A stretch of 63,663 nt of DNA, counting the filler, from Octopus bimaculoides (lineage: Eukaryota): NCBI RefSeq assembly GCF_001194135.2. It is 5 parts of 4 records of this genome, joined end to end, with 100 filler letters (N's around TTAATTAATTAA, not from the genome) between each part and the next. Parts side by side here need not be neighbours in the genome. Positions count along the whole stretch, not along the records: positions 27,810 to 44,738 come from NC_068991.1; 4 more parts are not named here. One strand, 5' to 3'. Positions 29,265 through 44,782 of the stretch are shown here, one piece after another. Under the pieces are notes generated by a model. That model saw only the letters and a program-made list of their open reading frames with translations. It did no database searches and was not told the origin of the DNA. Positions within the stretch are counted from its first letter, which is position 1. Every line of letters begins with the position of its first letter. Made by a program: the position numbers and the translations under genes.

Positions 29265-29479
29265 TGAAGGCGGTGAGCTGGCAAAATTGTTAGCACTCCG
29301 GGGAAAATGCTTAGCGGCATTTCATTCGTCTTTACGTTCTGAATTTGAATTCCGCTGGGGTTGACTTTGCCCTTCATCATTCGGGATCGTTAAAATAAGT
29401 ACCAGCAGAACACTGGGATCGGTATAGCCGACGTTCCCCCCCCCCGAAATTGCTGGCCTTTTCCCAAAATTTGAAACCA
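29265..29479 (+). mobile_element. SINE family B, full-length
   Basis: Runs from AAGGCGGTGAGCTGGC to GCTGGCCTT..AAAATTTGAAACC. Possible 8-bp TSD TAAACACT at 29256-29263 and 29487-29494. Confidence 0.85.
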
Positions 29480-31706: not shown

Positions 31707-32129
31707 CTGAAAAACATATTTAACCGCATAGTTCTTTATATACCTTTCTTTAAACTCTAGTTTGCAGCAAAATATCAATTCTTACTTACCAATTTCGAAA
31801 GTTGCATTTCTTGCTCCAGCCTAGTGTGCAGTACATGCTCTAGCTCTGTGCTCTGAGTTCAACTCTCGTAGAAGTAAACTTTACTTTCCATCCTTTTGGG
31901 GTCGATAAAAATGTACAAATCCAAGGCAATAGATTAGTAGAGATGTAAGTATTTGTTCTCAGATCAAATCCTGCATCAATTTGGCATCCTAATTTGACAG
32001 CTCCATAGTTAACAGAATCTGCTCTGCAAGAACTCAGGTTGGGTTTTTTAATGCCTTCCGCTTCGGACGTCCTGTAATATGTCATGGACGCCGCCTTTCT
32101 TCCTGACTAAAAAAAGTGTAGAGTAAAAG

Positions 32130-32460
32130 GTATAAGGCCAGCAATTTTGAGCGCAGAGTTAGTCGATTACATCACTCGTAGTATTTGATTGATACTTTAT
32201 TATGTTGACCCCAGAGGGATGAAAGGTAAAGTTGATCTCGCCAAATTTGAAGACAGAACAAATACGCAAGGCATTTTCCCGACGCTTTTACGATTCTGCT
32301 TATCCATCGCCAATATTCTGTCTTAATATAATGGAGTGTTATCTAGTCACAAGGCCAGCAATTTTATGGAGGCGAGGGTGGGGCTTTAGTTTATTATATC
32401 GATCTCGAATGTATGAAGAGAAAAGTTGATTTCGAAGGGTATTGAACTCAGAACATAAAG
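32130..32460 (-). mobile_element. Two tandem degenerate SINE family B copies
   Basis: AAGGCCAGCAATTTT occurs at about 32136 and 32350, each followed by the reverse complement of the family B body. Confidence 0.65.
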
Positions 32461-32480
32461 AGGGTGTCATTTTGTCTTAA

Positions 32481-32540
32481 TAACAACTATATGCACGGAA
32501 CAACAATTATATGCACGGAACAACAACTACATGCACGGAA
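32481..32540. repeat. 20-bp tandem repeat x3
   Basis: Unit (C/T)AACAA(C/T)TA(T/C)ATGCACGGAA, three copies. Confidence 0.95.
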
Positions 32541-33131: not shown

Positions 33132-33190
33132 NNNNNNNNNNNNNNNNNNNNNNNNNNNNNNNNNNNNNNNNNNNNNNNNNNNNNNNNNNN

Positions 33191-33244
<54 letters not shown>

Positions 33245-33689
33245 CCTGAAATTGAATTGAATGTGTTACTATCTTGATACCAATATATACTTTTTAATCT
33301 TTTTTGCAAGCACTACACACTCACACACACATACACACGTATATATATATATGTATACGCACACACATATACATACATACAACATACATATATGTGTGTG
33401 TATGTATGTACGTATGCATGCGTGTATGTATGTTCTCTTCTGTTTTTAATTATTTTGAATTCTTCAAATGGGGAAGGAGCTGGTTTCTAACAAAGATACA
33501 AAGCTCTGTCATTGGAATGCAGAAAACAACGTCACATTTTAAACTTGAGGAAAATCTTGCATATTTTTACTGCTCCACTTACAGATTGTGTTTGTAATGT
33601 GCGAGCTGGTTGATTTTTGTTGCTGAAAAATCCAAGCTTATCCAGACTGTCAGTTAGGCATTTACTCACAAATCAAATGCGTCAATTAT

Positions 33690-34157: not shown

Positions 34158-35034
34158 TGTATGTAGGTAGGTAGGTAGGTAGGTAGGTAGGTACTGAGAA
34201 AGGGTTAAATTTTCATACGTATTCGTTTTATGTTGTTTAACTAAAATAAGGTTTAATTTTAACACAAATGGCAGATAGTTTTTTTTCTATTTATGTATTT
34301 ATATATTTGAAAATAGAAAATACATTTTCATATAACAATTTCTTTTCGTATAATAGTTTTATTGAAAATATATTAGTGCATATAATCACATATATAACAC
34401 AAATAAATGGTGTGTATATATATATATATTATTTAAGAGTTCCAGCTCTGTTTTTTTGTTTTATTTATATTATTNNNNNNNNNNNNNNNNNNNNNNNNNN
34501 NNNNNNNNNNNNNNNNNNNNNNNNNNNNNNNNNNNNNNNNNNNNNNNNNNNNNNNNNNNNNNNNNNNNNNNNNNNNNNNNNNNNNNNNNNNNNNNNNNNN
34601 NNNNNNNNNNNNNNNNNNNNNNNNNNNNNNNNNNNNNNNNNNNNNNNNNNNNNNNNNNNNNNNNNNNNNNNNNNNNNNNNNNNNNNNNNNNNNNNNNNNN
34701 NNNNNNNNNNNNNNNNNNNNNNNNNNNNNNNNNNNNNNNNNNNNNNNNNNNNNNNNNNNNNNNNNNNNNNNNNNNNNCTTTGTGACTTTTTCAACTTAGA
34801 GTAAAGCATAAAAAACAATTAAATTGTGGAAAAATTAGATGAAATGTTTTTAAAATTTTTTCCATAGTTTTCAAATGCAAGCGACATTTTCCTTTTTTCT
34901 GTCTGTCTCTCTTTTTTACTCTGGTGAGGGCTTGGTAGCAGGTAGCAGGTAGCAGGTAGTAGCAGTCCTAATATTTGATATGAGTTCTTGGTTTTGATTG
35001 TTTAAGCAGCAGCAGCAGCAGCAGCAGCAGTAGC

Positions 35035-35275: not shown

Positions 35276-35893
35276 TGTCCGTTACTCACACTGCGTTCCT
35301 TTTTGTTTGTTTGTGCGCATGTGTGTGGATCAGTGGGTGTGTGCCTATACATGCATGCAAGTATGTATGCATGTGTGTGTATCCATGTATGTATGTGAGT
35401 GTATATCTATATATTTATGTGTGTACATTTGTATGTATGTATTCTGCATGTTCATGTGTTTGCATGTTGGTGTTTGTGTGTTTTTTATGTATGTGCGTGT
35501 GTGTGTGTGTGTGTGTGTTTGTATATGGGTGTATGTGTACCTCTGTCACCTTATGTGTGCATGTCCAAGTGTGTGTATATGTGTGTGTGTGTGTGTGTAT
35601 GTGTGTGTGTTTTGCAACTATGGACCGTGTTTGTATGTATGGATGTGCATCTCTATATGTGTGGACGTGTGTCTACATATGTGTCCTTGTGTGAAGTAAA
35701 GTGTGTGTGTGTATATATGGTCATGTGTTTCGGTCTTCATTTGCGTATGTGTGCTTGTTTGTTCATATAAACTATGTAACTATTCGTTTGTATGTTGATC
35801 TGTTTACTTTCATATCCATATGCTTACATACATGTGCATATACATATATATATATTCATACACCCATCCACACACACATACATACATCTATCT

Positions 35894-35989
<96 letters not shown>

Positions 35990-36070
35990 CCCACACACAC
36001 ATACATACATTTATCTACATAACAGCCCACTAACTATTCTACTTTACCTGTGTAAACTGTGGGTATGGGG

Positions 36071-37250
36071 GGGTATGATATCTACTATATATATTTCCTA
36101 TTTAGTATTGAGGAAGTTTCATTTATGAGGACGTACTCCCGTATTTGTCTGAATGTTGAGTCCTTTGGGTGCTTGGATAAAATGCGGATGTCAAGTTGAC
36201 ACGGGTTACCTCTATGCTGGTCCTTAGCATGTTGGTAGAGTATGGAGGACTGTTTTTTTTTTGTCGTCATATTGTCTCAAATGATCTTTTAAGTCGTTCC
36301 GTAATGCTCCTAGATGTCTCCCCTATGTATGTCATGTTCATGTCTTTACAAGCACCTTCTATGCATCTTATGCTGTAAACTACATTTCGAGTTCTACAGT
36401 TAATGCCAGTTAATCCTACATGCCATGCAGTTATCATTGGTGCATATGGTATTCTCAAAGGGCTACGTCCTACATAGTTGTGATCTGACGAAGTTCCCTG
36501 GTTTGTCAACAATCTTAATGTTGAGTTTAGTCTCCTTCATAGCTTTCCTAAATCTACGGGCTAGTTTTTCATGGGCTGTAGCCTCTACAAACATCACTCC
36601 TTGATATTTGTTGGTTTTGCACCACGTGTTCGCCCTGTTTGCTTTGTCACAAGTTCTTTGTATCCTATTCCAGTCTTTGTTTCTATATCTAGGGCAGATA
36701 CCACTGGTATCATTACGTATAATGTTATCTAACATCTTTCTAGCACCCTGTATACTCGAACTCTATCTTTCTGATCATATCCAGAGAACTGCATTCGGTG
36801 CATGAAGTTCTGTATATGTTTTTTTTCATTTCATAGGGTTCGCATTGTGGGGACACGTTGTTCATTATCCTAACTAAGTCTGCCATCAGTATGTTAATTT
36901 TCATGTTGTGTGACAAAGCTGTGTTCTTGTGAACAACATATCTTGAAGCTATAGGTTTCATGTAATAGGAGTGAAGGAGCTGTACTCTATTGTTCACAGT
37001 CTCTCACCAAAGTTCAGTATCAAGTGCGGGAAGTCTATTGTTGGGGTGCTTAGTGGGGTAATCTATGGTTACCTTGGTACTTTGGTGGATGGAGTTAGCT
37101 ACTTGCTGGATGCTCTCCATTACGTTCCTCTCAGTTTCTACTCTACCGTTACTAGAGTTGGTCCTAACTATGATATTAATGTCATCTACACATCTACTGT
37201 AGAGTAGAAGAGTTGTGGACAGTTCTGCTAACATTTGCTTAAGGAAATAT
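36071..37250 (-). pseudogene. Penelope-like element, 5'-truncated (RT thumb + GIY-YIG endonuclease), frameshifted
   Basis: Contains YSRCVDD (YxDD-like), LPALDTELW, CRTRNVVYSIRC...YIGETSRSITERL, HAKDQH and [14 protein letters not shown]. Confidence 0.85.
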
Positions 37251-37324
37251 ACATACTCACAGTTTACACAGGTAGAGTAGAATAGTTAGTGGACTGTTAT
37301 GTAGATAAATGTATGCGTGTGGGG

Positions 37325-37388
<64 letters not shown>

Positions 37389-37430
37389 AGGGTATGATAT
37401 CTACTATATATATTTCCTATTTAGTATTGA

Positions 37431-39705
37431 ACATGAAAAACCTAATGCAGAAGAAGCAAGACAGTTTTGAAGTAATATTTGGGGTAAGCCAGTTAATCAT
37501 AATGGAGATGCAGTATGGTTAAAGAAAGCGAAGGAAGAAGTAATGAATGAGAAGCAGCTAGATCTAAGATTAACCAGTGCATTAATGAGTAAAGTGTTAG
37601 GAAAAATGCTGAATTGGAGGGGCCCAGGACCAGATGTAGTTCAAGGGTACTGGCTAAAGAAATTCAATAGTTTACATGGGAGGCTGAGGGAACAACTTCA
37701 GAATTGCCTTAATGGAGGAGTAATACCAGATTGGATGACTAGAGGGAGGACAATACACATTATGAAAGATAAGAGCAAGGGTAATACAGCCAGCAGCTAT
37801 AGACCAATCACTTGCTTACTATTAGTGTAGAAGCTGTTAACAAGAATGCTTTCAGAAAGTATTTACGACAATTTACTACCAGAAGAACAGAAAGGTTGCA
37901 GGAATAGGGCTAAAGGAACGCATGATCTATTATACATAGGCAAAACAGTTTTAAATGAAGTAAAAGCTAGAAAGAGAAATCTAACAATAACATGGATAGA
38001 TTACAGGAAAGCCTATTACATGATCCCACACTCACAGATAAGTGAATGCTTGGGTATATTCAGCATATCAGACAGCATAAGACAATTAATTAGCTGTAGT
38101 AATGAAGAAATGGAAAGTAGATCTCTACTCATGTGACACACTCTTAGGGAATGTTAATATCAAAAGAAGAATTTTCCAGGGGGACTCATTGTACCCTTTA
38201 ATATTTGTGTCATGTTTGTTCCTCCTCAGTTTAGCATTAAGGAAGACAAAGACAGGGTGTCAGAAATAGTAAGGGAAAAATTTACCATTTGCTCTACATG
38301 CATGATCTGAAGCTTTTTAGTAAGAATGAAAAAGAGATAGATTCCTTAATATAGACTGTAAGACTCTTCATCAAAGATACAGGTATGGAATTCGGCATAG
38401 ACAAGTGTGTAATATTAGTCATGAGAAGGGGACAGGTAGTCAACAGCAAAAGCATCCAATTATCAGATGGCCAGACATTAAAATCATTGAAAGGAGGAGA
38501 GAGTTATAAGTATCTAGGAGTATTAGAATCTAACAGAATACTAACTGTAGAAATGAAAACGAAAGTTGAGGAGTTCATCAGAAGGATGAAGAAGCTAATG
38601 AAGTCAAAGCTAAATGGTCCAAAGCTAGACAGAAGAACTAGGGAGGGATTCAATAGGAATAGAGGACTCTACTCAAGGGCAGGAGTAGCAAGATTATACC
38701 TACATAAACAGGAAGGCGGAAGAGAGTTAATATCAGTAGAAGACTGCACGGAGTTAGTTACAGCAGATATAGACTACAGCAGATATAGGTAATAGTGAAG
38801 AAAGTTTATTGAAAGCTGCTAGAGTCACAGCAAGACATAGGGAAACCAAAAACCCAAACGAAGTTAAAAAAACAGAAAAAAGAACAGAAATTATCTGACT
38901 GGCTGGAGAAGGCATTGCATGGTAGATTCCCAAAGACAGTTGCAGCAAATAATAGTAGTGAGACATGGTTATAGTTGCAGAAAGGAAAACTAAAGAGGGA
39001 GAAGAAAGTTTGTTAGTAGCTGCACACGATTAAGCATTAAGGACTAATTGGATAAAAGCCAAGTCAGACAAAAACCAAGAAGACTCCCAATGTACATTAT
39101 GCAAATCAAAAGAGAAAAGCATTACTCATATAATAAGTGAATGTAGCATGCTGGCACAAAGAATACAAGAAAAGACATGACAATCTAGGGAGAGCAATCC
39201 ACTGGGAGCTATGTAAAAAGCCAGGATTTGAACATACCGATAAATGGTATGAACATGAACCTAATAAAGTACTAGAAAGTAAGAAATACAAGTTGTTGTG
39301 GGACTTTAACATTCAAACTGACAGAGTAATAGAAGCTAGAAGGCCTGATTTGGTAGTAGATAAAGAGAATAGAAAGTGCTAAATAATTGACTTTACAGTA
39401 CCGAATTATGAAACGATTAATATGAGAGGTATAGAAAAATTAGCAAAGTACTAGGACCTAGCTATTGAATTACAGAGACTATGTATCCCAGTAGTTATAG
39501 GTGCATTGGTAACTGTCCTTAAAAATCTGAACAGATGGATAGAGGAAATAGGCATAAAAGCCAGTTTAGTACAACTCCAGAAAACAGTGTTATTAGGGAC
39601 AGCTAGGATACTGAGGAGGGTTCTTGGCGTCTAAGGCTATTTTTTATAGCCCGATGTTAGGATTCTTTTCTTTTCCAACAGTCTAATCTGTTGAGTGTAT
39701 ATGAA
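37431..39705 (+). pseudogene. R4/Dong-like non-LTR retrotransposon, 5'-truncated, degenerate RT + zinc knuckle + RLE
   Basis: Contains GPGPDVVQGYWLK, YRPITCL, EQKGC, WIDYRKAY, FQGDSL, LYMHDLK, YKYLG, a CxxC..HxxxEC knuckle, RHDNL and RRPDLVV..IID. It ends in an (AAT)n tract. Confidence 0.9.
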
Positions 39706-39783: not shown

Positions 39784-39799
39784 CATTTCTACTACAGGC

Positions 39800-39960
39800 A
39801 CAAAGCCTTACATTCTGAGTTTAAATTCCACCGATGTCAACTTTGCTTTTCATCCTTTCGGGCTCCATAAAATAAGTACCAGTTGAGCTCTGGAGTCGAT
39901 GTAATCGACTTATCCCCACACGCGAACATGCTGGCCTTATGCCAAAATGTGAAACCATCA
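39800..39960 (+). mobile_element. SINE family B, 5'-truncated
   Basis: Reads TTCTGAGTTTAAATTCC...ATAAGTACCAGTTGAG...GCTGGCCTTATGCCAAAATGTGAAACC followed by a (CAT)n tail. Confidence 0.85.
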
Positions 39961-40469
39961 TCATCATCATCATCATCATCATTATTCACACTGATAAAAT
40001 GAAAATTAGAAAGAAATATTTGCGTTACATACCTTTAATTATTTCACCTATCTCTTTTATTTACATTATTTTTGCTTGTGGGCCTCCAAAACTGAATTCC
40101 TGTCACGATACCACGCTCCGTTCAAGATAAGAGATTTCTTGGATGCAATTCTCTCCACATATTTCTTGTGTTTGAATAGAAAAGGAACTAAATATGATTT
40201 TTAACATCATTCAGCGTGTGAGAAAGAGAGGAGAAGGAAAAGCGAAGTGTGTGCGAAAGAAAGAACATTTAGAGATAAGAGGAATAGTTTGTACATGTAT
40301 GAGTATGTGCGTATATGTATGTGTATGCATGTATGCGTGTGTCAGTGCGCAGTGGTGGGGGGGGCGTGTGACAGCGTGCAATAGAGAGGAAACAGAAAGG
40401 GAGGGAAAGAGAGGGAAGCTGAAAGGAAAAAGGACTTCGTGAGTCTGAGAGCGAGAAAAAAAGGGAGAA

Positions 40470-40717: not shown

Positions 40718-40804
40718 ATATTGTTAATGGTTCGCTCAATATTGTTGACGGTTCGCTCAATATTGTTGATGGTTCGCTCAATATTGATGATGGTTCGCTC
40801 AATA
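40718..40804. repeat. 21-bp tandem repeat x4
   Basis: Unit ATATTGTTGATGGTTCGCTCA, with 0-1 substitutions per copy. Confidence 0.95.
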
Positions 40805-43249: not shown

Positions 43250-43307
43250 GTAATATATGTATAGTACTATTTTGTCTGTCTTTACGTTCTGAGTTCATGT
43301 ATAGTAC

Positions 43308-43571
43308 AAGGCGGCGAGCTAACAGAATCGTGTATTGCTTCGGCATTACATATACTAAAATTGGAGCTAACAGAATCGTTAGCACGTCGAGAAAAAATGC
43401 TTAGCGGCATTTCACCTGTCTTTATGTTCTGAGTTCAAATTCCGCCTAAGGTCTACTTTGTCTTTCTTCCTTTCAGGGTCGATAAAATAAGTACCAGTTG
43501 AGTACTGGGGTTAATGTAATCGACTTACCCCTTCTCTTGAAATTGCTGGCCTTGTGCCAAAATTTGAAACG
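43308..43571 (+). mobile_element. SINE family B, full-length, carrying a nested U6 fragment
   Basis: Runs from AAGGCGGCGAGCT to AATTTGAAACG. Flanked by AATATATGTATAGT (43252-43265) and AATATATGAATAGT (43572-43585). Confidence 0.9.
43332..43365 (+). pseudogene. RNU6: 3'-truncated U6 snRNA retro-fragment (about nt 1-35)
   Basis: GTATTGCTTCGGCATTACATATACTAAAATTGGA retains the U6 5' stem-loop (TGC-TTCG-GCA) and the conserved ACATATACTAAAATTGGA. A perfect 16-bp TSD GAGCTAACAGAATCGT lies at 43316-43331 and 43364-43379. Confidence 0.85.
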
Positions 43572-44782
43572 AATATATGAATAGTGTTGCACTAAATTTT
43601 GATAAAAATTAACTATCCATTCTTTTATTTTCATAGTAAAATTAGAATTGTATTTTAACCTTGAAAATTCTTTAAAAAAATTTTAATGAAGAAATTTAAT
43701 CCCAATTATTTTCCGGGTAAGTGAAATCCTGGAGCTGACATAATATCGGTTAAAATATCATTCTATAATTTTCAATGAAAATAATTTTTCAATTAATCGT
43801 AATCTATCGTAGCTAATTTACCATATCTTAGATTCAACAGTTTGCCTTAGGAGAAACGTATAGTAAAATAGATGAAAAATATTTCCCTGGGAATAATCTG
43901 TAATAGACCTTCATTATGGTCTATTACAAATTATTCCCAGTATATTACAGTATTGTGATAGGCCAGCAGTAGATCAGTAATATGGTAGATCAGTATACGG
44001 TAGATCAGTATTATGGTAAATTTGCATAACAGGCCAACATAATGCCGCTCTAATACAGATTAACGTAACAATTATATAGCCTAGTACATTATTTCTGAGA
44101 AGCAATAACAAGTAGAGTTAGTTATTGGAACAAAAAAAGGTATTACATGTAATATTATTTAAATCTGTGATCAAATCTTGCGATTGGTTGTGTTTCGACG
44201 TAGTTACACGAACTGCTAAAAGTGACTGCCACATTTCTTTCAAATCAAATTCTACTTTCCTACAACTATAAGAATACACTAAATAATTTTGTCCAAGATA
44301 TTGTATGTAGGAATATAAATCAAAATGGTCACTAATGGAACGCTTTTGATCATAGTTCTCAATCAGTTGCATCCAAATGATTCAGTGACGTAAGAGGAGA
44401 AATAAACTTAATAGTTATGTTGTCAATAAAACTTGAAATTATTACTATTTGTCTCAAGCTCTGCTATTAATCACACTTCTACATTATCTCAGTACTTCAT
44501 CTTTGCTATACTGTATATAAACAGAGTGTAGTGTCATTTAAACATATATAACCAGAGATAGGTTTGAATTGTCTAATACTGTATACGTATTCGTATCTAA
44601 ATTTTTTGTATGTTTGGTGATAGTTTTCTTTTATTTGTGTGGTGTGTGTGTGTGTGCGTGTGTGTGTGTGTGTGTGTGCGTGCGTGTGTGTGTGTGCGTG
44701 TGTGCGTGCGTATGTGTGTGTGTATGTGTGTGTGTGTGNNNNNNNNNNNNNNNNNNNNNNNNNNNNNNNNNNNNNNNNNNNN

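What the first reader, a model, noticed from the sequence alone, without database searches (positions are those of the whole stretch)
43316..43379. 34-nt U6 snRNA 5' fragment retro-inserted into a SINE head with a perfect 16-bp target-site duplication
Seen: GAGCTAACAGAATCGT is duplicated exactly around GTATTGCTTCGGCATTACATATACTAAAATTG. The last two U6 bases (GA) double as the first two TSD bases, a 2-nt microhomology, and there is no A-tail. Established: 3'-truncated, tailless U6 retrocopies ending near nt 34-35 are known products of LINE machinery in mammals. Inference: an invertebrate LINE performs the same internal-priming capture of U6 here, and it landed inside the Pol III promoter region of a SINE. 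The SINE-U6 chimera could itself be transcribed or copied.
Basis: partly seen in the sequence, partly recalled or inferred. Interest (0 to 1): 0.7.

Follow-up and report, generated by a model that had tools for sequence, protein, structure and literature searches.

The report
Short U6 retrocopy inside a SINE
A 32-34-base copy of the start of the spliceosomal U6 RNA, flanked by a perfect 16-bp duplication, sits in the head of an older SINE repeat; it fits the "tailless retropseudogene" class known from mammals and is ordinary, except that the host looks like an invertebrate and the nick site is not L1-like.

Summary
GAGCTAACAGAATCGT occurs twice exactly (43316-43331 and 43364-43379) around a 32-nt spacer.

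- **Identity.** The spacer is U6 snRNA from nt 1. It matches a bona fide full-length U6 gene at 30/32, with blastn-short E of 3.5e-10 and 9e-11. Homology stops at U6 nt 34, whose last two bases (GA) overlap the repeat. There is no A-tail.
- **Host element.** It is a roughly 216-bp SINE, about 12% diverged, with its own imperfect target-site duplication (13/16). The two other head-bearing copies in the piece lack both the insert and the duplication.
- **Target site.** It is partly complementary to the U6 sequence just 3' of the truncation point (p about 0.004 to 0.03), as described for mammalian tailless retropseudogenes.
- **Best reading (about 0.6).** U6 RNA was reverse-transcribed from an internal priming site at a staggered nick in an already resident SINE.
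- **Caveats.** The nick site (C|GAGC) is unlike both L1 sites and this SINE family's own T|A-rich sites. The host genome, its U6 genes and an empty site could not be reached, and no other chimeric copy was found.
- **Extra.** A second micro-insertion lies 35 bp upstream: a 29-nt SINE-internal fragment between perfect 11-bp repeats.

This is a new member of a known kind, of modest interest.

The parts
43252..43267 (.). Upstream copy of the SINE's own target-site duplication (AATATATGTATAGTAC)
   Evidence: Matches 13/16 with AATATATGAATAGTGT at 43572-43587, directly after the SINE 3' end. The SINE ends were set by alignment to the other copies.
43257..43267 (.). First copy of a perfect 11-bp direct repeat, ATGTATAGTAC
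   Evidence: It flanks the 29-nt SINE-derived micro-insertion.
43268..43296 (+). 29-nt internal SINE fragment (about SINE nt 53-81), truncated at both ends, with no tail
   Evidence: blastn 21/22 to the SINE; nhmmer model positions 39-60. It differs at 5 of 29 sites from this SINE's own copy at 43404-43432 (read), so it was copied in trans.
43297..43307 (.). Second copy of the 11-bp repeat, abutting the SINE 5' end
43308..43571 (+). Host SINE copy (about 216 bp without the 48-bp insertion), with a tRNA-like head carrying A- and B-box-like motifs
   Evidence: Five other copies or fragments of the family lie in the piece. This copy differs from the majority of the others at 20 of 165 sites. ARAGORN does not call a tRNA at default settings.
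43316..43331 (.). Left copy of the 16-bp duplication (SINE nt 9-24, including the A-box-like TAACAGAATCG)
43332..43363 (+). U6 snRNA nt 1-32: 5' stem-loop with a UUCG loop, then ACAUAUACUAAAAUUG. Homology runs on through GA at 43364-43365.
   Evidence: Rfam U6 from model position 1. 30/32 identical to the full-length U6 gene L004:493-598. Predicted hairpin of -5.8 kcal/mol with one U.U mismatch.
43364..43379 (.). Right copy of the 16-bp duplication. Together with the next 7 nt it is partly complementary to the U6 sequence 3' of the truncation point.
   Evidence: In the alignment of GAGCTAACAGAATCGTTAGCA with GAACGATACAGAGAAGATTAGCA, only 0.37% of all 24-mers in the piece score as well.
43431..43443 (+). 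B-box-like motif GAGTTCAAATTCC of the SINE
   Evidence: Read directly. It falls in a stretch of largely conserved columns in alignment A1.
43572..43587 (.). Downstream copy of the SINE's own target-site duplication (AATATATGAATAGTGT)

Best explanation
A tailless (3'-truncated, internally primed) U6 retropseudogene that inserted into an already resident, decayed SINE copy.

Proposed steps:
1. The bottom strand of the SINE head was nicked between SINE nt 8 and 9.
2. The freed 3' end, which is the complement of GAGCTAACAGAATCGTTAGCA, annealed imperfectly to the single-stranded U6 region at nt 33-55, with its last two bases paired to U6 G33-A34.
3. A reverse transcriptase copied U6 nt 32 back to nt 1 and ran off the RNA 5' end.
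4. The top strand was cut 16 bp downstream, and fill-in produced the 16-bp target-site duplication.

Shown: the identity of the insert, its exact +1 start, the truncation point, the absence of a tail, the perfect duplication, the target-RNA complementarity, and the absence of the structure from other family members.

Inferred: that the enzyme was a LINE endonuclease/reverse transcriptase, that priming was internal rather than on a pre-cut RNA, and that the event post-dates the SINE insertion.
For: - The insert is U6 from position 1 and stops at nt 34. It is 30/32 identical to a full-length U6 gene with the same 32-nt 5' part.
- A start exactly at the transcription start points to an RNA template copied to its end.
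- The 16/16 duplication is of typical LINE target-site-duplication length, similar to this SINE family's own duplications of 10-16 bp.
- There is a 2-nt overlap plus extended target-U6 complementarity. Only 0.37% of all 24-mers in the piece score as well, or 2.8% of those starting with GA. This matches the 'integration site complementarity' described for tailless retropseudogenes (PMC5322556; PMC4476161).
- Human U6 tailless copies are mostly 30-41 nt long.
- The SINE is about 12% diverged and its own duplication is 13/16, yet the 16-bp repeat is perfect. The chance of that, if the repeat were as old as the SINE, is 0.02-0.07. So the event is probably younger than the SINE.
- The two other head-bearing copies lack both the insert and the duplication.
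- A second tailless-looking micro-insertion 35 bp upstream shows that this kind of event happens in this genome.
Against: - The inferred nick site GGC|GAGC is not TT|WAAAA, the site of mammalian tailless copies. It also differs from the T|A-rich sites of the three SINE insertions in the piece and of the upstream micro-insertion.
- No L1-clade element was identified. The only reverse-transcriptase remnant in the piece is unclassified.
- Noll et al. report tailless copies only where relaxed L1 is active.
- Two such micro-insertions within 35 bp are unlikely as independent events, unless the SINE 5' boundary is a preferred target.
- The host's own U6, an empty site and genome-wide counts could not be obtained.
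- The insert has a U.U mismatch in the 5' stem, so either it carries one or more mutations or the source U6 differs from what I assumed.
Confidence: 0.6

Rival explanations
1. LINE-independent, RNA-templated break repair. A staggered break, or a stalled or collapsed strand, in this region was repaired by a polymerase able to copy RNA (Pol-theta-like or a stray reverse transcriptase). Alternatively, end joining captured short cDNAs. One complex event may have produced both micro-insertions (the U6 fragment and the 29-nt SINE fragment), each time returning 11-16 nt behind the departure point.
For: - Two small insertions of RNA polymerase III transcripts lie 35 bp apart, both in the same orientation, both about 30 nt long, and both between perfect repeats.
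- The nick site is not like the family's endonuclease sites.
- The target-U6 complementarity would serve equally well for annealing during repair.
- Insertions at breaks templated from RNA are known in human cells (PMC5110952).
Against: - The class 2 templated insertions described there are repair patches. Target-site duplication is listed only as a class 1, LINE-1-type feature.
- Duplications of 16 and 11 bp are what staggered endonuclease nicks give, and they match this SINE family's own duplication lengths.
- Another SINE in the piece also has a later SINE insertion 4 bp from its 5' end, with a normal 13-bp duplication. So clustering at SINE 5' ends can arise from ordinary separate insertions.
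Confidence: 0.2
2. Template switching during the SINE's own retrotransposition. The reverse transcriptase copying SINE RNA jumped to U6 RNA at the region of partial homology, ran to the U6 5' end, then jumped back to SINE RNA 16 nt behind. On this view the '16-bp duplication' is not a target-site duplication.
For: - The homology between SINE head nt 9-29 and U6 nt 33-55 would favour such a jump.
- U6 is the classic partner in LINE template-switch chimeras across several LINE clades (PMC4476161).
Against: [quoted passage not shown]
- A return jump to an internal SINE position with no microhomology at the junction (CGT|GTATT) is ad hoc.
- The two 16-bp copies are identical, whereas the SINE is about 12% diverged and its own duplication is 13/16 (p about 0.02-0.07).
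Confidence: 0.1
3. The structure was already present in a master SINE and this locus is one member of an amplified SINE-U6 chimeric subfamily.
For: The second A-box-like copy keeps its normal spacing to the B box, so RNA polymerase III transcription of such an element is conceivable.
Against: - None of the five other SINE copies or fragments in the piece has it.
- The 22-mer GAGCTAACAGAATCGTTAGCAC has no near match elsewhere in the piece.
- The chimeric reading frame is absent from the protein collection, though this is weak evidence.
- If the structure were inherited, the two 16-bp copies would be as old as this diverged copy and should differ.
- The A-box-like motif here is degenerate (TAAC, against TGGC in one other copy and TAAGC in the other).
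Confidence: 0.05

Closest known systems
Tailless retropseudogenes, i.e. 3'-truncated snRNA pseudogenes (Schmitz et al. 2004; Noll et al. 2015, PMC5322556; Doucet et al. 2015, PMC4476161, their Group II)
   Same: The 5' end of the small RNA is intact. The copy is truncated in a single-stranded stretch and has no A-tail. It is flanked by a target-site duplication, and the target is complementary to the RNA at the 3' junction. U6 is a frequent source, with most human copies 30-41 nt long.
   Different: The nick site is GGC|GAGC rather than TT|WAAAA. The host is apparently not a therian or a lizard, and no L1-clade element was identified. The insert landed in a SINE head that itself resembles the U6 sequence 3' of the truncation point.
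U6/LINE-1 (and U6/L2, U6/SINE) chimeric retrocopies made by template switching (Doucet et al. 2015, Group IV)
   Same: U6 RNA is captured by a retrotransposon reverse transcriptase and ends up joined to retroelement sequence.
   Different: In those chimeras, U6 is fused head-to-tail to a 5'-truncated partner and the pair shares one target-site duplication. In the U6/L1 chimeras U6 is full-length; in platypus U6/L2 chimeras it is mostly 5'-truncated. Here U6 is 3'-truncated, has its own duplication, and interrupts an otherwise complete SINE.
Templated sequence insertions at DNA breaks (Onozawa and Aplan 2016, PMC5110952)
   Same: A short patch templated from RNA transcribed at a distant locus is inserted into the genome.
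   Different: Class 2 (repair-type) insertions are not described with target-site duplications. Class 1 insertions have duplications but also poly(A) and TTTT/A sites. This case has a duplication but neither a tail nor such a site.

Membership tests
Tailless retropseudogene / 3'-truncated snRNA pseudogene | Derived from a small cellular RNA, with the RNA's own 5' end intact | tested here: met
   The Rfam U6 alignment starts at model position 1 = 43332, the first base after the repeat. 30/32 identical to the U6 gene L004:493-598.
Tailless retropseudogene / 3'-truncated snRNA pseudogene | 3'-truncated, with no oligo(A) tail | tested here: met
   U6 homology ends at nt 34. The next bases are the repeat GAGCTAAC..., with no A-run.
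Tailless retropseudogene / 3'-truncated snRNA pseudogene | Flanked by a target-site duplication | tested here: met
   16/16 identical direct repeats immediately abut the insert. Shuffles rarely exceed 12 bp.
Tailless retropseudogene / 3'-truncated snRNA pseudogene | Target site complementary to the source RNA at the 3' junction | tested here: met
   A GA overlap, plus 16 of 23 matches to the U6 sequence 3' of the truncation point. Empirical p is 0.0037, or 0.028 when conditioned on a GA start.
Tailless retropseudogene / 3'-truncated snRNA pseudogene | L1-type first-strand nick site (TT/WAAAAWW) | tested here: not met
   The pre-insertion top strand reads GGCGGC|GAGCTAAC. The consensus is quoted.
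Tailless retropseudogene / 3'-truncated snRNA pseudogene | Made by a relaxed L1-clade LINE that is active in the host | not testable with these tools
The only reverse-transcriptase remnant in the piece (37846-38136) gives a weak RVT_1 hit and no clade assignment.
Tailless retropseudogene / 3'-truncated snRNA pseudogene | Presence/absence: an empty site exists in relatives or other alleles | not testable with these tools
   Four exact look-ups of neighbouring ORFs found nothing, and the homologue search found nothing.
U6 spliceosomal RNA gene (RF00026) | Full-length match at or above the gathering score | tested here: not met
   12.9 bits against a gathering score of 44, covering model positions 1-43 only. 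It is a fragment, not a gene, and there is no U6 gene elsewhere in the piece.
U6/LINE template-switch chimera | U6 (full-length in U6/L1 chimeras) joined at its 3' end to a 5'-truncated retroelement, with one target-site duplication around both | tested here: not met
   U6 stops at nt 34. SINE sequence lies on both sides, and the duplication is internal to the SINE.
tRNA-derived SINE (the host element) | Short, dispersed in multiple copies, with target-site duplications | tested here: met
   Six copies or fragments in 17 kb. Duplications of 10-16 bp flank three of them.
tRNA-derived SINE (the host element) | Head recognisably derived from a tRNA | tested here: inconclusive
   A- and B-box-like motifs are present. 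ARAGORN finds no tRNA at default settings and only a poor fold at relaxed settings.

The most novel reading that the evidence does not exclude
In this (probably invertebrate) genome, a non-L1 retrotransposon machinery, or an RNA-templated repair route, routinely makes copies of about 30 nt from RNA polymerase III transcripts. Because the SINE head is complementary to the U6 sequence just 3' of the truncation point, it would act as a recurrent landing pad. Many independent U6-in-SINE insertions would then exist at the same SINE position. That would extend tailless retroposition beyond the L1-bearing vertebrates to which it has been assigned.
Probability: 0.15. Interest if true: 0.55.

Novelty: new member of a known kind. 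Interest (0 to 1): 0.3.

Why it matters
Tailless retropseudogenes have been treated as a signature of relaxed L1 activity. They were reported in therian mammals and the anole lizard, with only a few cases in maize (PMC5322556).

A clean example in a genome with a different repeat landscape, at a nick site that is not L1-like, hints that internal priming on small RNAs is not limited to L1. It also hints that RNA-target complementarity can select the site. A single locus cannot establish either point.

For annotation, this is a U6 fragment, not a U6 gene, and it interrupts a dead SINE. No function is expected.

Tried and rejected
- **Rfam over the whole piece.** No U6 at E<=1. The hits were microsatellite-driven false microRNA matches. 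The U6 fragment appears only when a short stretch is searched.
- **Host U6 or more SINE copies in public collections.** Exact-pattern scans of metagenome, viral and prokaryote-genome contigs all returned nothing.
- **Same or orthologous locus via neighbouring ORFs.** Four exact protein look-ups found nothing on record.
- **Host DNA via the reverse-transcriptase ORF.** The best homologues are only 43% identical, and their contigs lack this SINE, so they come from another organism.
- **Translated-U6 search.** This found real U6 genes in other organisms (L003, L004) but none with this insert's GCATTAC stem arm.
- **Search with the chimeric reading frame.** No candidates.
- **SINE consensus in the literature by sequence string.** Nothing found.
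- **Chance match.** Rejected on the E-values and the exact +1 boundary.
- **DNA-transposon excision footprint.** Rejected because, from my own knowledge of transposon families, 16-bp duplications are not typical of DNA transposons, and because the filler is an RNA-end-defined U6 piece.
- **Local duplication as the source of the 29-nt upstream fragment.** Rejected because it differs at 5 of 29 sites from this SINE's own sequence (read) while its flanking repeats are perfect.

Full report
**Observation.**
The sequence reads ...AAGGCGGC GAGCTAACAGAATCGT | GTATTGCTTCGGCATTACATATACTAAAATTG | GAGCTAACAGAATCGT TAGCACG.... The two 16-mers (43316-43331 and 43364-43379) are identical and the spacer is 32 nt. 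Among 16-mers repeated within 100 bp in the 17-kb piece, the only other non-microsatellite cases lie in two tandem arrays. Locally shuffled sequence gave repeats of 10-12 bp as a rule and 15 bp once in 30 trials.

**Identity of the spacer.**
Rfam's U6 model aligns from its first position at 43332, the first base after the repeat, and runs through the 5' hairpin with its UUCG loop and the invariant ACAUAUACUAAAAUUGGA. Because only a third of the model is covered, the score is 12.9 bits, far below the gathering score. The full-piece scan missed it. The 18-mer ACATATACTAAAATTGGA is present exactly, against 0.08 matches expected even with three mismatches allowed.

To get real genes for comparison, I translated the U6 reading frame and searched the protein collection. 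That returned spurious ORFs lying over U6 genes. Two were fetched and confirmed as full-length U6: L004:493-598 at 117.5 bits and L003:215-321 at 115.8 bits. L004 has the same architecture as the insert, with 32 nt before GGAAC and a 7-bp stem. It is 30/32 identical to the insert, and the two differences are the two partners of one stem pair. blastn-short gives E 3.5e-10 and 9e-11, with homology ending at U6 nt 34 = window 43365.

So the insert is U6 nt 1-32, or 1-34 if the GA shared with the repeat is counted. There is no A-tail. The insert folds into the expected hairpin with one U.U mismatch (-5.8 kcal/mol, against -11.3 for L004). That suggests one mutation since insertion, or a host variant that I could not see.

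**The host element.**
Blast, MAFFT and nhmmer find six copies or fragments of one SINE family in the piece:
- 43369-43570 (the focal copy)
- 29269-29477
- 39798-39955
- 32304-32129 (minus strand)
- 32461-32344 (minus strand)
- 31830-31920

They also pick up a 22-nt match at 43276-43297. The focal copy runs from 43308 (AAGGCGG..., the same start as copy 29267) to 43571. It is flanked by AATATATGTATAGTAC and AATATATGAATAGTGT, which match 13/16. The two other copies with heads have a single copy of the 16-mer region and no U6.

The head carries A- and B-box-like motifs, but ARAGORN does not recognise a tRNA. From memory only, the family resembles the abundant SINE of octopus genomes. No tool confirmed the organism.

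**Age.**
The focal SINE differs from the majority of the other copies at 20 of 165 sites, about 12%. Two 16-bp copies of that age would remain identical with probability 0.02-0.07. The duplication is therefore probably younger than the SINE insertion. This argues against it having been made during the SINE's own retrotransposition or inherited from a master copy.

**Target-RNA complementarity.**
The Rfam alignment ran on into the repeat. Anchored at the junction, GAGCTA-ACAGA-ATCGTTAGCA aligns with the U6 sequence that follows the truncation point, GAACGATACAGAGAAGATTAGCA. Only 0.37% of all 24-mers in the piece score as well, or 2.8% of those that begin with GA.

This is the feature that Noll et al. 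call integration-site complementarity and that Doucet et al. describe at the 3' junction of truncated snRNA pseudogenes. It fits a nicked bottom strand annealing to the single-stranded part of U6 and priming reverse transcription back to the RNA's 5' end.

**Comparison with the known class.**
Both papers describe 3'-truncated, tailless snRNA copies with target-site duplications. The copies are truncated in single-stranded segments and are attributed to L1 by internal priming. Noll et al. list 144 human U6 cases. Of the 29 I could read, 22 are 30-41 nt long, so a 32-34-nt copy belongs to the main class.

Two things differ here. The nick site is GGC|GAGC rather than TT|WAAAA. And the class was reported only from therians and the anole, with a few cases in maize, and was tied to relaxed L1. 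The family's own insertions in the piece have T|A-rich sites: T|AATA, A|TAAA and T|ATTA. So the U6 site is atypical for the local machinery as well. The only reverse-transcriptase remnant in the piece is unclassified.

**A second micro-insertion.**
Thirty-five bp upstream, ATGTATAGTAC occurs twice exactly (43257-43267 and 43297-43307) around a 29-nt piece, TATTTTGTCTGTCTTTACGTTCTGAGTTC. This piece corresponds to SINE nt 53-81 or so. It differs at five sites from the focal SINE's own sequence (read), so it was copied in trans. It has no tail and is truncated at both ends.

Its 5' end lies close to where two 5'-truncated family members begin. The proximal repeat abuts the SINE 5' end and overlaps the SINE's own target-site duplication.

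Elsewhere in the piece, a 5'-truncated SINE with a 13-bp duplication (ATTAAGACA[A/G]AAT) lies 4 bp upstream of another SINE's 5' end. SINE 5' boundaries may therefore be preferred targets, which would make two separate events at one spot less surprising. Alternatively, one complex RNA-templated repair event produced both insertions. I cannot separate these readings without an allele that has only one of the two.

**Mechanism and rivals.**
- **Best reading (0.6):** target-primed reverse transcription of U6, primed internally, at a staggered nick in a resident SINE.
- **LINE-independent RNA-templated repair or cDNA capture, possibly one event for both inserts (0.2).** The odd nick site and the clustering favour it. 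The target-site-duplication-like repeats weigh against it, because duplication is listed only for the LINE-1-type class of templated insertions.
- **Template switching SINE to U6 to SINE during the SINE's own insertion (0.1).** Against it are the perfect repeats, the absence of microhomology at the return junction, and the statement that internal initiation on U6 has not been seen in U6/L1 chimeras.
- **Inherited chimeric subfamily (0.05).** There is no second copy anywhere I could look, and the age argument is the same as above.

**What could not be done.**
No collection available here holds host DNA. The host's own U6, the empty site and genome-wide counts therefore remain open.

**Verdict.**
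The responsible enzyme and the suggestion of an active chimera are unproven. This is a new member of a known kind and of modest interest.

Noticed in passing
window 43257-43307: A second micro-insertion. Perfect 11-bp direct repeats (ATGTATAGTAC) flank a 29-nt internal fragment of the SINE family, copied in trans (5 differences from the local copy). It has no tail and directly abuts the SINE 5' end.
   Followed up: partly
window 32315-32481 (minus strand): A 5'-truncated SINE copy (32461-32344) with its own 13-bp duplication, ATTAAGACA[A/G]AAT (32481-32469 and 32327-32315). It lies 4 bp upstream of the 5' end of a full-length SINE (32310-32129). This is the same kind of adjacency as at the focal locus and hints that SINE 5' boundaries are preferred insertion sites.
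   Followed up: partly
window 39790-39800, 32455-32461, 43268: Two 5'-truncated SINE copies and the 29-nt fragment all begin near the same SINE position (about nt 53-60). This suggests either a recurrent reverse-transcription stop or a headless subfamily.
   Followed up: no
window 43364-43385 versus the U6 sequence 3' of nt 32: The SINE head (GAGCTAACAGAATCGTTAGCA) resembles the U6 stretch that holds the ACAGAGA box and the AGC triad. The focal copy's TAAC (TGGC in one other copy, TAAGC in the other) improves the match.
   Followed up: partly
window 36267-39382: Degraded retroelement remnants. Plus-strand ORFs at 37543-39382 include a weak RVT_1 hit (37846-38136). Minus-strand ORFs at 36267-37234 have no credible Pfam match (one weak sub-threshold hit only). 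The best database homologues of the 38385-38792 ORF are only 43% identical and come from another organism.
   Followed up: partly
window 33320-33430, 35351-36092, 37301-37390, 40289-40351: TG/TA-rich microsatellites give many sub-threshold Rfam microRNA hits (mir-297, mir-3149, mir-466 and others). These look like low-complexity artefacts.
   Followed up: no
window 40727-40790 and 32488-32540: Two short tandem arrays, with units of about 21 bp (GGTTCGCTCAATATTGTTGAT) and about 20 bp (TATATGCACGGAACAACAA).
   Followed up: no
window 33132-33190 and 34475-34777: Runs of N (assembly gaps) inside the piece.
   Followed up: no
L003:5-321: On a 547-bp ENA metagenome scaffold, a 5S rRNA gene (5-123) is followed about 90 bp later by a full-length U6 gene (215-321) on the same strand. 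This is a linked 5S-U6 unit in an unidentified eukaryote.
   Followed up: no
protein collection: The U6 gene is open in one reading frame (…[30 protein letters not shown]). At least 236 spurious 'proteins' in the collection are translations of U6 genes, one of them named as a hypothetical protein of Capra ibex.
   Followed up: no
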